64,000 nucleotides of DNA, taken from assembly GCF_000315625.1 (NCBI RefSeq), contig NW_005434618.1, positions 316,429 to 380,428 on the forward strand. The letters are read 5' to 3'. Below the pieces are notes generated by a model. The model made no database searches. It was not told the origin of the DNA and saw only the letters and a list, made by a program, of their open reading frames with translations. Source of the DNA: Guillardia theta CCMP2712. Taxonomy: Eukaryota > Protista > Cryptophyta. The position numbers and the translations under genes are program-made. This document shows positions 30,025 to 36,655 of this stretch, one piece after another (within the stretch, counting starts at the first letter, position 1; each line of letters begins with the position of its first letter).

Positions 30025-32052
<2,028 letters not shown>

Positions 32053-32342
32053 CGTGTTCAATGAGGTTCAAGTCAACCCAAGCGACTCAAGGTTTGTTTG
32101 CTCTACCGTCTGTTTTACTGTGTGTTGAGGGCCGGGAATGTTCCTTGCAGCAAGTTTCTGCCAGTCACCGTGACGGTATGCTGTTATTTCCTTATCGACA
32201 TCATCATCATCATCATCTCTTCTCCTTCTTCTCCTCTCCTCTCATCCCTTCTTTCCTCATTGCCGCACTTGTCAGTTGCTTGACCATGACCCTGCCGTTA
32301 CAAATTGTAACGATTCAGGTCAAGCATCTTGTTGGGGTCGAC

Positions 32343-35300
32343 ATGGCCGGGCATTGTAGCGACTGCGAGGTAAAAGAGCAGCAGCGATGAGAAGCTTGTT
32401 TGCGCTGATGACCATACTGATGCACATGCTTGCTCTGCTCCTCTGCATCATCGCTTGCCTTTGCTGTCTCACGCGAAAGGCAACTGCTTGTCTCTTGACA
32501 CGACATATTGCAGATCGAGCTCAGCCATGACACTGCAGACACCTCGAAATGCGTAAGACCAGTAGCTGCTTGTTGCAGCCATCTGACTTCAATCTTTCAT
32601 GCTTCGGGATGAAACGGCGCTCTTGCTTGTGCGGGAGGGACACAGCGGGTAAATATCTGTATTGTTTCAATGAGTTCATTCAGGGATCGGGTGGTTGACA
32701 TCTGTTCTTTTCAACCTTTGGTAAACAAATTGAATGCACCTTTGACGGGCCGGAATAGCGAGTGAGTATCATCTTGTAAATGCCCTCATGGAACAATCGT
32801 TAACATCGCTTTGCATTTTTTTCTGTTGCATTTATACGGCTGCTTAGAATGTAAGAAATAACTAGAAATCATAATCTCAACGATTGATTGGACTGAAATT
32901 ATTTCTTTCGATTTGTTCTGATTGGATGGCCTGTTGAGGGACTGGATAGGGAGTAAGTGACAATTCAACATGATTCCTGCTACGCGATGGGTTGAATGAC
33001 TTTTTTTGACGTTCTTGTCGTGGAAACTGTTGCTGGGCCTGGATAGCTTGTAAGTTTCATCTTGAAACTTGCAGTCAGGCATTGGACTGATATTTCGAAT
33101 TTCAAATCACTTATTTTTCACTTGGATGGGTTTGTTGAGGATAGAATGTAAGTCGCCTTCGCTTCGCTGAAGGATGCAATTGAGAGAAGATACGCTGACA
33201 TCAGTTTGGCAACCGTTTTGGTTATGCTCGGATGGACTGTTGATGGTGTTGGATAGTACGTAAGTGACAAGTCAAAAATGATTGTCTCTAAGATCTGAGA
33301 TCCTTTGGACTGACATTTGTGATGCTTCCTGGGTTGTTGCTGGATTTCTGGATTGTTGCTATTGGAGACAGCGAGTCAGTATCATATGCAAGAATGCAGT
33401 TCGATCATAAAACTGACGTTTTCCTGGATGTGGCATGTGTTGGCTGCTCTGACGAACTGACTATTGGTCTTGACAGCGAGCGGTAAGTGATGATTGGGAG
33501 AGATGCTCTCAGATCGTTGAACTGACTAGTGTTTGGCAAATTTCGATTGTTATGCTTCTTGGATCAATGCAAATCTGGTGTCTATGTAGGTTGTAAGTAT
33601 CCATGAGAAGTGAAGAAAATCAAAGATCGAGTGGAACTGACATTGTTTTTGCCTTCTCTACCTGTTTTCCTCCTGGGCTATTCACTGGGTCTGGACAGCT
33701 TGTGAGTAGCAAATACTGCAATGCCTGTCTGACACCGACTGACTGACGTTTTTATTTATCACATAACTGGATTCGGGGACTGAGCGGAATAGTTTGTGAG
33801 CGTCTTGTTGAATAAGCTCTTGTGAGAGACTGACATTGATTCTTCTCTTTCCGTTTGTCTTGCCAACCCATGCACGCACTTGAATTGGCCCATCAGTGCT
33901 GTGTAAGCGATTTCTTCATCCTGTGTCTGTCTGCAGACCTGACGTTGCTTGTGTTTGGACATGCTGTCGCACACCTTGTAGAATGTAAGTTTGCGCTCTT
34001 ATACGATCATCGGTGATTGTTCTACTATCTTGACTGATTGGCTCAGTGTGCCCATGCTCGAGGATGGTCGAAATACGACAAGGTAAACAATCGCTTTAAG
34101 GACTGACATATGAAGTGACGGCCGCTGTCAGGAGGCATGTTGCCACTGCAAGACACGACTAGTAGAGAAGAGGGAGGAAGAGCAGCGCAAGCTGAAAGAG
34201 CAGGAGGAGCAGCGCAAGCTGAAAGAGCAGGAGGAGCAGCGCAAGCTGAAAGAGCAGGAGGAGCAGCGCAAGCTGAAAGAGCAGGAGGAGCAGCGCAAGC
34301 TGAAAGAGCAGGAGGAGCAGCGCAAGCTGAAAGAGCAGGAGGAGCAGCGCAAGCTGAAAGAGCAGGAGGAGCAGCGCAAGCTGAAAGAGCAGGAGGAGCA
34401 GCGCAAGCTGAAAGAGCAGGAGGAGCAGCGCAAGCTGAAAGAGCAGGAGGAGCAGCGCAAGCTGAAAGAGCAGGAGGAGCAGCGCAAGCTGAAGGAGCAG
34501 GAGGAGCAGCGCAAGCTGAAGGATCTGTTGGCGATGGAATACCCCAAGCTAGAGCATGTGGAGTTGAATCTTGCTGTTGATCGAGCCATCAGAATTCAAG
34601 AAAGCACGGACAGGTCGAAGTCTGGCCTGTACTTCATCTTCAAATGCATGGTGAAGGTTGATAACGTGCAAAGAAAAGGGATACTGAAAGCAGCAAAAGA
34701 TAAAACAAGCGAGGCAAAGCTGCGTCGTGAACTTTTGTTCTACACCAAGATCCATAGGGACAGCAATGCACAAAATTATATCGTCAAGGATATATACATG
34801 GAGGAGAAATGGAGTGTGGACGGTTGCTGTGGTTTTCTTGCCATAGTTACAGAGCGAGCAAAGCAATCTCTTGCAGACTGGATTGCTGAGACTGATTTTG
34901 AAACACGTCAAGATCACAAACTGGGGATCTGCCGGCAGCTGGGGAGAGTTGTTTCTTACCTACACAAGCAAAATCTGGTATGGCTTGCAGTGAAGCCTAC
35001 TAACTTTCTCATGTTCAAAAACCACAAGATCAAGGCTGTAGACTTTGATTCTGCAGATATGGTCGGGGCTAATGTGACCCGACGGAGTTTTGCATACAGC
35101 GCACCAGAACTGATGTTGAGAGACTCTGTTGCAGCTTCTTTCCTGATGGACGCTTGGTCCTTGGGAATGACCATCTTCGAAGTTTTTACAGCTAGAAGCC
35201 TCTGCGCCTTGTTGGGACTGAGCAATGAGGATGACGTAGTACGGTTCTGGAACAACGATGGGAGTGAAAGACTACTACAAGAGAAAGCAGGAGAGGTGTT

Positions 35301-36655
35301 GTCAAGCTCCAGTACTGACACGAGCCTGAATCATTTACTCTTCGGAAGAGACGGAGTCGGTGGCCTGCTGAGGGTGCAGACTTGCAGACGAAGCTCCGTG
35401 CTGCAGAGCATGCAAGATCGATCCCTCTTCACGGACCAAGAAACGGTCGTAGGGATTCACGCCCAGCTGAAAAATATACAACAGACTCTGGAACAAATCA
35501 AGGGTCAAGTCAGCCTCCTGCATCCTCTCATCTGCGAGGGGCTTGACGGCATCATCGCTCAGGCTGCAACCAACGACAGAGTGCAGGAACAGTTGAAGAG
35601 GCTGAGCATCAGCCTGCAGCAGATACCCGACGTGACCAACGACCGGATTGACTCTGACGACATTCGGAGCTATCTCAAGGAGATCTACAAGGCGGTAAAG
35701 GCTTGTTCCACGACATCCTCAGGCAACTCCTCCTTCTGTCTAGAAGACGTCAGTCGCACTCTCAAAGAAGCTCTTGCGCACTGTCAGAACGCGCGCAGCA
35801 GAGAGGAGAAGGAGATGCTCAGCAAGGTGCTCGAGCAGACTGCAGCCATGAAGTCTCAGCTGGACAGGGTTGAGAATCACATGACTGACATCAGATCAAA
35901 CCTCAAGAGGGCAGTCGCGACTAGTCGGTCAGCGGTGGCCTCATTGAATGAGCTCTGTCTGGCAGAGTCTCGTGACAGGTTGGCTCCGTACTTTGTCTGG
36001 ATCTACCCAGCTGAGCGCAAGAAAAGCCTGTTGAGCCGATTGAACCCGGAGAACTGGGTCTACCAAAGAGTTCACATCCGATTCATCTGTCCTGTCAGTC
36101 TACGGATCTGCGAGCAAGGGTTTCAAACTGTGGAGATGAAGAGCTGGTTCAAGCGAGCGCTCCCCTATCTCAAGGCTGCCTTGCTCGTCCTGGAGATCGC
36201 TCTCAACGGCGCTGCTGGCAGCATTGGCCTGCCATGCCCGGCCCTCGGAGGTCAGATACCCCGAGAGACGCGCGAGCTGGAAGCGGTGAAGGCTCTCAGC
36301 GCCTTCGTGACAGAGGTGGCGGTGAAAGAGCAAGTGGACCTGGAACCCATCGAGAGCTATCTGAGGGGTCGGGGAGGAGGGCAGGGGCTGTTGGAGGCGA
36401 GTCGTCGTAGCCTGAGAAGCAGCAACAGAGTTGTGGCAGAGCTGATGGAAACTATTGACAGGTGAAAGGCGCTGTCTGCGATGAAGCTTGTTCTAACAGC
36501 ATGGCAGGGGATGGGTGGACAAGACCGGGCTCAAGTTCGTGACTGCCGAGGATGGATCTGTGGAGTGGGTACATCCGTCGGTAGCAGAGAACTTCAGGAG
36601 AGACGGAAGGAGGATGTTCTCTCCGCTACAAGCTCCTTCCGTAGCTCCGCCTTGA
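32343..36655 (+). CDS. RING-like Cys domain (micro-exon encoded) + coiled-coil repeat + protein-kinase-like (pseudokinase) domain + coiled coil + Roco/TORNADO1-like C-terminal region
   Basis: Proposed exons: 32343-32369, 32514-32552, 14 micro-exons (32646-33984), 34047-34082, 34132-36461 and 36508-36655. All join in frame with ORF 34528-36465. Kinase motifs GILK, LVWLAVKPTNF, AVDFD, YSAPE and DAWSLG. Confidence 0.8.
32646..33984 (+). other. Array of 14 phase-0 micro-exons (3 or 6 nt)
   Basis: Each is AG|exon|GTRAG-like: CGG 32646-48, CGA 32759-61, AAT 32848-50, GGA 32950-52, CTT 33047-49, AAT 33145-47, TAC 33257-59, CGA 33372-74, CGAGCG 33477-82, GTT 33590-92, CTT 33699-701, TTT 33793-95, TGCTGT 33897-902, AAT 33982-84. 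Confidence 0.88.
34174..34521 (+). repeat. Coding 27-bp tandem repeat x13 encoding (EEQRKLKEQ)n
   Basis: Unit GAGCAGCGCAAGCTGAAAGAGCAGGAG, almost perfect, in frame with the kinase ORF. Confidence 0.97.

What the first reader, a model, noticed from the sequence alone, without database searches (positions are those of the whole stretch)
32553..34046. Array of 14 single/double-codon micro-exons: candidate combinatorial splicing diversifier
Seen: a 1.5-kb AT-richer, ORF-poor stretch resolves into 14 consecutive AG|NNN|GT units spaced ~80-115 bp apart (CGG, CGA, AAT, GGA, CTT, AAT, TAC, CGA, CGAGCG, GTT, CTT, TTT, TGCTGT, AAT). Donors are strong (mostly GTAAGT/GTGAGT). Every exon is 3 or 6 nt, phase 0 and free of stops. 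Joined, they read RRNGLNYRRAVLFCCN and link flanking exons (...DTSKC and CAHARGWSKYDK|EACCHCK...) in frame into the kinase ORF. Inference: any subset can be skipped without frameshift (up to 2^14 isoforms), so splicing could edit one protein loop residue by residue. Established analogue: schistosome micro-exon genes, whose exons are typically longer. I do not know of a described run of single-codon exons this long. Gene predictors would miss it.
Basis: partly seen in the sequence, partly recalled or inferred. Interest (0 to 1): 0.97.

Follow-up and report, generated by a model that had tools for sequence, protein, structure and literature searches.

The report
Fourteen one-codon exons, probably really spliced
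In the alga Guillardia theta, a 1.5 kb stretch before a kinase-like gene holds 14 exons of one or two codons, each followed by a ~100-base intron; a sister gene's mRNA shows such exons are spliced in, but nothing yet shows they are mixed and matched.

Summary
Observation confirmed. Window 32553-34046 holds 14 AG|N3 or N6|GT units on the + strand, 79-112 nt apart. That is about 40 times the background density.

The genome is Guillardia theta CCMP2712. No RNA could be laid on this locus, so the reading rests on paralogs.

- The paralog on contig C60 has the same layout. A 100%-identical transcript contains all 11 of its micro-exons, ending TGCTGT + AAT exactly as here.
- The CC|N micro-exon pair recurs at 15 loci, against 0 in the control.
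- Joined, the window's exons give a peptide that fits a conserved 8-cysteine N-terminal module: CxxC...KC - variable loop - CCNCA..GW..Y...CxxCK. The module has no Pfam family.
- The same module also exists without introns, in this genome and in metagenomes.
- The array introns show a branch-like motif about 58 nt from the acceptor and a strong AG-free zone behind it.
- NCBI gene models of two paralogs start downstream of their arrays.

The combinatorial-splicing idea has no support. The paralog transcripts include every micro-exon or retain introns, and the CC and N exons encode invariant residues.

An unexplained point remains: intron units can be ~90% identical while the codons they flank are unrelated.

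This scan already reported a 39-micro-exon array elsewhere in this genome (s1-431588). I found no paper describing such arrays.

The parts
32344..32370 (+). Exon 1 (27 nt, MAGHCSDCE): first CxxC of the Cys8 module. Predicted.
   Evidence: Sequence. Same 8-9-codon first exon in paralogs C60 (MSRTCKACQ, in transcript-derived P0004), C23 and C118.
32371..32513 (+). Intron 1 (143 nt, GTAAAA...CAG)
   Evidence: the AGCAGCAGCGATGAGA block near its 5' end is shared with intron 1 of C23 and C118.
32514..32552 (+). Exon 2 (39 nt, IELSHDTADTSKC), ending in the third Cys
   Evidence: A 39-nt exon of the same kind lies in C60 (VMIDPGTTQRSKC, in transcript), C23, C118, C12 and C22.
32553..34046 (+). The array: 15 introns (62-112 nt) separating 14 micro-exons
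32646..32648 (+). Micro-exon 1, CGG (R); donor GTAAAT is weak
32759..32761 (+). Micro-exon 2, CGA (R)
32848..32850 (+). Micro-exon 3, AAT (N)
32950..32952 (+). Micro-exon 4, GGA (G)
33047..33049 (+). Micro-exon 5, CTT (L)
33145..33147 (+). Micro-exon 6, AAT (N)
33257..33259 (+). Micro-exon 7, TAC (Y)
   Evidence: The 3' end of the preceding intron (33225-33268) has copies about 88-92% identical elsewhere in the genome (records 4, 5, 14).
33372..33374 (+). Micro-exon 8, CGA (R); donor GTCAGT is the weakest of the set
33477..33482 (+). Micro-exon 9, CGAGCG (RA), 6 nt
33590..33592 (+). Micro-exon 10, GTT (V)
33699..33701 (+). Micro-exon 11, CTT (L)
33793..33795 (+). Micro-exon 12, TTT (F); an aromatic residue before CC, as in C33a (TTT) and C60 (TAT)
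33897..33902 (+). Micro-exon 13, TGCTGT (CC): invariant Cys pair of the module
   Evidence: The same 6-nt exon is present in the C60 transcript. The signature is found at 15 loci against 0 in the control. CC is invariant in the alignment.
33982..33984 (+). Micro-exon 14, AAT (N) of the CCNC motif
34047..34082 (+). 36-nt exon, CAHARGWSKYDK
   Evidence: Homologous 36-nt exon in the C60 transcript (CAKSRGWTGYDE) and in C33a, C118, C12 and C22.
34083..34131 (+). Intron (49 nt) with its branch-like CTGAC about 25 nt from the acceptor, closer than in the array introns
34132..36461 (+). Large exon: EACCHCK (last CxxC of the module), coiled-coil repeat, protein-kinase-like domain
   Evidence: Pkinase, E 4e-18. 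54% identical to the C60 protein. The 3' end at 36461 is inferred.
34175..34520 (+). 27-nt tandem repeat x12.8, 99% matches, encoding (EEQRKLKEQ)n
36508..36655 (+). Last exon (approximate), ...GWVDKTGLKFVTAEDGSVEWVHP...
   Evidence: Match to the C-terminus of P0001. Frame analysis; boundaries inferred.

Best explanation
The stretch is a run of 15 real spliceosomal introns that break the 5' coding region of a Guillardia theta kinase-like gene into 14 micro-exons, 12 of one codon and 2 of two.

Product (inferred): when all are spliced in, they encode a 13-residue variable loop plus the conserved Cys-Cys-Asn of an 8-cysteine N-terminal module. This module is probably a two-zinc finger. In this genome it heads a family of kinase, ROCO (LRR-Roc GTPase), SAM-domain-like and coiled-coil proteins.

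Splicing mechanism (inferred): each ~100-nt intron is recognised on its own (intron definition). It has a strong GTRAGT donor and a yTRAy branch-like motif about 43 nt after the donor. A U/G-rich, AG-free tract of about 55 nt then runs to an (A)TAG acceptor. The long branch-to-acceptor distance would leave room for the next donor, which lies only 3 nt away. Neighbouring introns are removed one after another rather than together.

Inclusion is most likely constitutive.

Evolution (inferred): the arrays differ between paralogs in number and identity of codons, with 6 to 14 one-codon exons before CC. The variation therefore lies between genes over evolutionary time, probably through duplication or recombination of intron-plus-codon units, and not between mRNAs of one gene.

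Shown: the anatomy; the splicing of 11 such exons in the paralog; the family-wide conservation. Inferred: inclusion at this locus, the branch site, the order of intron removal, zinc binding, and the mode of array growth.
For: 1. Organism and paralog. P0002 is XP_005828351.1, GUITHDRAFT_142065, of G. theta CCMP2712. Transcript contig L031 matches contig C60 at 100% in every block. It contains GCG, GTG, ATT, CAT, then an 87-nt exon, then CCT, TAT, TTT, TTC, TAT, TGCTGT, AAT, then a 36-nt exon. Each micro-exon is flanked by AG and GT in the genome.

2. Same architecture here and elsewhere. C33a, C118, C12 and C22 all have exon 1 of 24-27 nt with CxxC, a 39-nt exon ending in Cys, an array ending TGCTG[TC] + AA[TC], a 36-nt exon CA...GW..[YF].., and then ..CxxCK.

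3. The CC|N pair pattern is found at 15 loci, against 0 in the control.

4. The joined window peptide aligns with the module in transcript-derived and intron-free homologues. Loop lengths there run from 9 to 36 residues, and the CC-x-C cysteines and the final CxxC are invariant. Intron-free copies exist in the same genome at C166 and C14 and in metagenome contigs.

5. Intron hallmarks over 84 array introns. Median length is 98.5 nt. The tract between the branch-like motif and the acceptor holds 19 AG dinucleotides against 153 in shuffles, and 58 of 75 tracts are AG-free against 9 expected. The three exon positions carry almost no information, while the flanks read ATAG|NNN|GTAAGT.

6. Sequential removal. 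Transcript L050 has the intron between CC and N removed while both neighbouring introns are still present.

7. The gene looks intact: a 2.3-kb open exon with a Pkinase match.

8. An extended branch-to-acceptor distance is also reported for vertebrate neural micro-exons (PMC12871342).
Against: There is no RNA evidence for this locus.

- The one raw RNA run gave 0 reads on the stretch, with reads of 60 nt at most and about 6% of the run read.
- RNA-guessed contig sets held next to none of the stretch's words.
- No transcript-derived protein of this gene appeared.

The gene may therefore be weakly expressed or silent. Two donors are weak (GTAAAT, GTCAGT), and six of the 13 tracts here contain one AG upstream of the predicted acceptor. 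The exact count of 14 is thus a prediction.

The kinase has Ala where the catalytic Asp of the paralog sits (WLAVKPTN against WLDVKPAN).

The duplication model predicts related codons in related units. That is not seen.
Confidence: 0.72

Rival explanations
1. Combinatorial diversifier: the micro-exons are real but optional. Regulated or stochastic skipping of subsets produces many loop variants from one gene.
For: Every exon is 3 or 6 nt and in phase 0, so any subset keeps the frame. Loop length is tolerated from 9 to 36 residues across the family. Two weak donors and the internal AGs could make some units inefficient.
Against: The paralog transcripts show full inclusion or intron retention and no skipping. 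The CC and N exons encode residues that are invariant or nearly so. The short introns suggest recognition intron by intron; intron retention outnumbered exon skipping in all but one of the species analysed in PMC6142364, a set that includes G. theta. Assembled contigs hide rare isoforms, so this is a weak negative.
Confidence: 0.12
2. Silent or decaying copy: the array and gene are a non-expressed paralog, and the micro-exons are relics that are no longer spliced.
For: No RNA was found in any accessible data set. The catalytic Asp is replaced by Ala. Two donors are weak.
Against: All 15 GT..AG pairs, the branch-like motifs and the AG depletion are intact. The 777-codon exon is open. The module's cysteines are all kept. 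The RNA searches were weak tests: the answer to itself says 'no test'.
Confidence: 0.1
3. One long intron: 32553-34046 is removed as a whole or by recursive steps. The AG|NNN|GT sites would be internal repeats or ratchet points that leave nothing in the mRNA.
For: Direct joining of 32552 to 34047 also keeps the frame.
Against: It would delete the invariant Cys pair and the loop of the module. In the paralog the homologous sites are retained as exons in the mRNA. Recursive sites have AG and GT directly abutting, which is not the case here.
Confidence: 0.04

Closest known systems
Schistosome micro-exon genes (MEGs; DeMarco et al. 2010, from memory; see also PMC3961193, PMC4015677)
   Same: Runs of very short symmetric exons (multiples of 3 nt) between ordinary terminal exons. 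Gene predictors handle them badly. The variable protein segment is encoded by the run.
   Different: MEG exons are mostly 6-36 nt or longer, and they make up most of the coding region of secreted proteins. Their variation by exon skipping is documented. Here the exons are 3 nt (rarely 6) and make up about 2% of the coding sequence. They lie inside a cysteine module of intracellular-type signalling proteins, and no skipping has been seen.
Single 3-nt micro-exons in animals, such as RPS24 with consecutive micro-exons of 3, 18 and 22 bp (PMC12207440), and Drosophila micro-exons (PMC8042270)
   Same: A 3-nt exon can be recognised and spliced accurately. An extended branch-to-3'-splice-site distance is reported for vertebrate neural micro-exons (PMC12871342), as in these arrays.
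   Different: Those are isolated or at most three in a row, lie between long introns, and are regulated by tissue-specific factors.
Introner-like elements (Micromonas, Aureococcus, some fungi; from memory)
   Same: Many introns of one genome share sequence well beyond the splice signals.
   Different: Introners are dispersed singly through unrelated genes. Here the related introns were found only in clusters, in tandem arrays at about 16 loci.
Recursive splicing ratchet points (Drosophila Ubx; from memory)
   Same: Closely spaced acceptor-donor pairs inside a long non-coding stretch, and stepwise removal.
   Different: Ratchet points leave no bases in the mRNA. Here 3 or 6 bases stay, as shown for the paralog.

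Membership tests
Spliceosomal micro-exon array (as verified in the C60 paralog) | Micro-exon bases are present in mature mRNA between the flanking exons | not testable with these tools
   Met for the C60 paralog. For this locus no RNA read or contig could be found.
Spliceosomal micro-exon array (as verified in the C60 paralog) | Same exon-intron architecture, with conserved terminal micro-exons TGCTGT + AAT followed by a 36-nt CA..GW exon | tested here: met
Spliceosomal micro-exon array (as verified in the C60 paralog) | Intron hallmarks: GT..AG ends, a branch-like motif, and an AG exclusion zone | tested here: met
   In this locus there are 6 AGs in 13 tracts, against roughly 2 per tract expected.
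Schistosome-type micro-exon gene (MEG) | Most of the coding sequence is made of symmetric micro-exons | tested here: not met
   48 nt out of roughly 2.6 kb of coding sequence.
Schistosome-type micro-exon gene (MEG) | Protein variants produced by micro-exon skipping | tested here: inconclusive
   No skipped form among four paralog sequences. No reads for this locus.
Introner-like element | Near-identical intron copies dispersed singly in unrelated genes | tested here: not met
   The 71 matches of one unit are nearly all clustered in tandem arrays at about 16 loci.
RING finger (C3HC4/C3H2C3) | Match to a RING profile, or the canonical ligand spacing | tested here: not met
   No Pfam family up to E = 10 for the module. 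Foldseek's best matches (U-box, RING, PHD, LIM) all have E above 2 on a model of pLDDT 70. The spacing CxxC-x13-C-loop-CCxC-x13-CxxC is not the RING pattern.
Protein kinase | Pkinase domain with catalytic Asp | tested here: inconclusive
   Pkinase match at E 4e-18. The position of the catalytic Asp holds Ala (WLAVKPTN).

The most novel reading that the evidence does not exclude
The arrays are a codon-cassette device. They could also be added, lost and reshuffled at the DNA level by recombination between the homologous introns. Either route would give a family of signalling proteins a recognition loop tunable residue by residue. The mismatch between ~90%-identical introns and unrelated codons would then be the footprint of diversifying selection on, or directed turnover of, the codons.
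Probability: 0.15. Interest if true: 0.95.

Novelty: new variant of a known kind. Interest (0 to 1): 0.82.

Why it matters
Exons of 3 nt are thought to sit at the limit of what a spliceosome can recognise. They are known as rare, isolated and heavily assisted cases.

This gives a natural system for asking three questions:
- how neighbouring splice sites only 3 nt apart avoid steric clash;
- in what order the introns are removed;
- what role a distant branch point plays.

It also shows that the public G. theta annotation truncates a whole family of kinase, ROCO and other signalling proteins, so that an undescribed 8-cysteine N-terminal module is missed.

Finally, the arrays are an unusual case of introns conserved more strongly than the codons they flank, which bears on how introns multiply.

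Tried and rejected
RNA evidence for this locus
- Read laying on window 32050-34228 with X5, X6, X7 and X1. The raw RNA run laid 0 reads, which is no test. X6 gave only low-complexity matches and matches to an intron unit. X1, the genome project's own reads, covers the stretch colinearly, as expected for DNA.

Statistical and repeat tests
- The stop-codon avoidance test is uninformative, because background AG-NNN-GT sites hold a stop in only 1.4% of cases.
- A test for duplicated codons within arrays showed no excess (P = 0.21), so simple recent unit duplication is not demonstrated at the codon level.
- Tandem Repeats Finder sees no array here.

The protein module
- A Pfam search of the module gave nothing.
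- AlphaFold2 on a 10-row alignment reached pLDDT 70, and Foldseek against the PDB gave no significant match. 'RING-like' is therefore not supported beyond a generic zinc-finger look.

Protein searches
- A word-index search with the module and with the C33a kinase found no further transcript-derived family members.

Other
The family statistics therefore rest on 8 loci and 96 micro-exons.
Full report
**Observation**

Window 32553-34046 is AT-richer than its surroundings, at 0.44-0.46 GC against about 0.58. It contains 14 sites of the form AG|N3 or N6|GT on the + strand. The micro-exons are CGG, CGA, AAT, GGA, CTT, AAT, TAC, CGA, CGAGCG, GTT, CTT, TTT, TGCTGT and AAT.

The introns between them measure 79-112 nt. 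Thirteen of the 15 donors are GTRAG-type; GTAAAT and GTCAGT are weaker.

Strict AG-N3-GTRAG sites number 10 in these 1.5 kb and none on the other strand. Elsewhere in the window the density is 0.17 per kb. This is not chance.

The units share blocks beyond the splice signals, such as GGATGG..CTGTTGAGG..GGATAG, at unit spacing. They have diverged too far for Tandem Repeats Finder to call an array.

**The gene**

| Part | Window coordinates | Content |
|---|---|---|
| Exon 1 | 32344-32370 | MAGHCSDCE |
| Exon 2 | 32514-32552 | IELSHDTADTSKC |
| Array | 32553-34046 | 14 micro-exons |
| 36-nt exon | 34047-34082 | CAHARGWSKYDK |
| Intron | 34083-34131 | 49 nt |
| Large exon | from 34132 | EACCHCK, 12.8 copies of a 27-nt repeat (EEQRKLKEQ), then a protein-kinase-like domain (Pkinase E 4e-18) |

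A short last exon follows at roughly 36508-36655.

**Organism and the decisive comparison**

The window is C56:316429-380428 of an 87.1-Mb, 669-contig genome. A 54%-identical protein, P0001, was the only database relative of the kinase part. Its cluster contains XP_005828351.1, GUITHDRAFT_142065, of Guillardia theta CCMP2712, together with two MMETSP transcripts. P0001 is encoded on a 2678-nt intron-free contig of a JGI sample, L031, and matches contig C60 of this genome at 99%.

I aligned L031 to C60 with a splice-aware dynamic programme restricted to GT..AG introns. Every block is 100% identical. Between ordinary exons the transcript contains these micro-exons:

- first array: GCG, GTG, ATT, CAT (AVIH);
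- an 87-nt exon;
- second array: CCT, TAT, TTT, TTC, TAT, TGCTGT, AAT (PYFFYCCN);
- a 36-nt exon CAKSRGWTGYDE, then YGCAFCK.

Each micro-exon is flanked by AG and GTRAG in the genome. So runs of one-codon exons are truly spliced into mRNA in this organism. The last two exons and the following 36-nt exon are the counterparts of the window's TGCTGT, AAT and CAHARGWSKYDK.

**A family**

A pattern for three successive units finds 179 places in the genome, against 44 for the reversed control. Many of them fall into arrays at 20 or more loci.

| Locus | Exons in array | Joined peptide |
|---|---|---|
| C56 (this window) | 14 | RRNGLNYRRAVLFCCN |
| C33a | 16 | SGGPWACPSNFGWFCCN |
| C118 | 13 | ARGDAYKGLWRCCN |
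| C12 | 11 | TDDIFLDDYCCN |
| C22 | 8 | AWIGNKCCN |
| C60 | 4 + 7 | AVIH; PYFFYCCN |
| C23, C33b (ROCO-type genes) | two arrays each | ATGTHPSV + GGR (C23); ASRRE + GFAEKWK (C33b) |

These were parsed. The specific signature AG-TGCTGY-GTRAG, 45-75 nt, AG-AAY-GTRAG occurs at 15 loci and never in the control.

All of these genes share exon 1 (CxxC), a 39-nt exon 2 ending in Cys, the array or arrays, the 36-nt exon and a final CxxCK. Downstream they carry kinase, LRR-Roc, SAM-domain-like or coiled-coil parts.

The NCBI models of C60 and C33a (GUITHDRAFT_142065 and GUITHDRAFT_108205) begin downstream of the arrays.

**The module**

A HMMER search of 1.8 billion representatives with the C60 N-terminus found eight other proteins with E up to 0.001. 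Most of them carry the module: CxxC-x-[IV]-x-[IV]-x(8)-KC, a loop, then CCNC[AGS]K..GW..Y...CxxCK.

One is a 65-residue ORF without introns on metagenome contigs. G. theta itself has intron-free copies at C166:41344-41544 and C14:155948-156127.

The window's joined peptide aligns with the module cysteines in register across its whole length. Its 13-residue loop lies within the family range of 9-36 residues, and CC-x-C and the last CxxC are invariant.

The module has no Pfam family. An AlphaFold2 model reached pLDDT 70, and Foldseek gave only non-significant matches to small zinc domains. I therefore call it a probable zinc finger of unassigned family, not a RING.

**Intron anatomy and mechanism**

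Over 84 array introns from 8 loci the median length is 98.5 nt. A yTRAy motif lies about 43 nt from the donor and about 58 nt from the acceptor.

The tract between the motif and the acceptor is strongly depleted of AG. It holds 19 AG dinucleotides against 153 in shuffles, and 58 of 75 tracts are AG-free against 9 expected. That is the classical signature of a used branch point followed by scanning to the first AG.

The window's own tracts show the same trend, with 6 AGs in 13 tracts. Its three introns without a perfect motif carry TTGAC, TTAAC or ATGAC at the same place. The ordinary 49-nt intron downstream has its motif about 25 nt from the acceptor, and the 62-nt last intron of the array has it about 9 nt away.

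An extended branch-to-acceptor distance is also reported for vertebrate neural micro-exons and is thought to relieve steric constraints (PMC12871342). I infer the same here.

A second transcript of the paralog, L050, has the intron between CC and N removed while both neighbouring introns are still retained. That fits non-simultaneous removal of adjacent introns. It is a single contig, so it is only a hint.

**The diversifier idea**

The four sequences available for the paralog are:

- two full inclusions, P0001 and P0004;
- one intron-retaining form, P0003, encoded on contig L050;
- the truncated gene model, P0002.

None skips a micro-exon. The CC and N exons encode conserved residues. Intron retention outnumbered exon skipping in all but one of the species analysed, a set that includes G. 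theta (PMC6142364).

For the window's own gene I could get no RNA at all:

- the raw RNA run laid no read, and the tool itself calls this no test;
- other RNA-guessed runs hold none of its words;
- the JGI contig scans were blank.

Combinatorial splicing is therefore unsupported, but it is not excluded for the loop codons.

**Evolution and an unexplained point**

One intron unit of C118 matches 71 places. Nearly all are clustered in arrays, with successive matches 3 nt apart, at about 16 loci. The introns are thus array-bound and not dispersed like introners.

All 96 micro-exons examined are 3 or 6 nt. This is what selection would leave if each new unit adds bases to the mRNA, as in a duplication model. 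It is not expected if introns were merely inserted into an existing exon.

Yet unit pairs whose 40-nt flanks are about 90% identical have codons no more alike than random: 25-39% nucleotide identity against a background of 27%. Identical codons are not enriched within arrays (P = 0.21). The three exon positions carry 0.03-0.2 bits, while the flanks are conserved.

Three explanations remain open: the introns are held constant by selection for micro-exon splicing, they are homogenised by gene conversion, or the codons turn over unusually fast. I cannot tell which.

**Novelty**

Full-text searches found no paper linking Guillardia to micro-exons and none describing runs of one-codon exons. The nearest are RPS24, with three consecutive micro-exons, and the schistosome MEGs.

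The scan itself has already reported a 39-micro-exon array in another gene of this genome (s1-431588). I did not use its evidence; my test on C60 is independent of it.

**Verdict**

The micro-exon reading is very probably right for this locus, by homology with a transcript-verified paralog. The combinatorial-splicing interpretation is not supported.

This is an extreme variant of a known kind of gene structure and is of high interest to splicing biology. Direct RNA evidence for this particular gene is still missing.

Noticed in passing
window 35000-35100 (large exon; residues ~284-300 of the translation of 34132-36465): The kinase-like domain has WLAVKPTN where the C60 paralog has WLDVKPAN. 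The usual catalytic Asp is Ala, so this copy may be a pseudokinase.
   Followed up: partly
window 34175-34520: A near-perfect 27-nt tandem repeat (12.8 copies, 99% matches) encodes (EEQRKLKEQ)n between the cysteine module and the kinase. Paralogs have different charged coiled-coil repeats at the same place.
   Followed up: partly
G000:C60:261219 and C23, C118, C22 (L042, L010, L043, L009): Intron 1 of several paralogs starts with GC (GCAAGA, GCAAGG, GCAAGC). Its removal in C60 is implied by the transcript-derived protein P0004 (MSRTCKACQ|VMIDPG). The window's copy has GTAAAA.
   Followed up: partly
L050 (JGI 3300017164, Ga0186123_102808) against G000:C60:260025-259470: A partly spliced transcript: the intron between the CC and N micro-exons is removed while the introns on both sides are retained.
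   Followed up: yes
G000:C14:526441-526648 (L004): Three candidate one-codon exons (GGA, CTT, TAT) lie inside what looks like an Hsp70-type gene (...EVDEVVLVGSSTRIPKIQ...). If real, micro-exon runs are not confined to the cysteine-module family. Not verified with RNA.
   Followed up: no
G000:C19:890489-893519 (L007, L008): Six short runs of 3-4 candidate one-codon exons lie within 3 kb, in a gene I did not identify.
   Followed up: no
G000:C166:41344-41544 (L048) and G000:C14:155948-156127 (L049): Intron-free copies of the same 8-cysteine module lie in the same genome, with loops of 20 and 13 residues. They are useful outgroups for dating the arrays.
   Followed up: partly
C23 and C118 arrays (L010-L015, L043): One type of intron 3' half (...TTCCTTGCTTGCATGGATTAAATTCGTCTTCATAG) recurs at about 90% identity before eight different units. 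Their codons are ACT, GGA, GGA, CGC, AGA, GGA, GAT and AAA. The introns are more conserved than the exons they flank.
   Followed up: partly
window 30946-32061, minus strand: A divergently oriented ORF of 371 aa with EGF-like cysteine repeats starts about 280 nt upstream of exon 1, so the two genes may share a short promoter region.
   Followed up: no
window 33225-33257, run X6 record 14: A 118-nt contig of depth 73, from a run only guessed to be RNA, matches this intron-unit end at about 91%. It comes from another array's intron and may reflect retained introns or DNA in that run.
   Followed up: no
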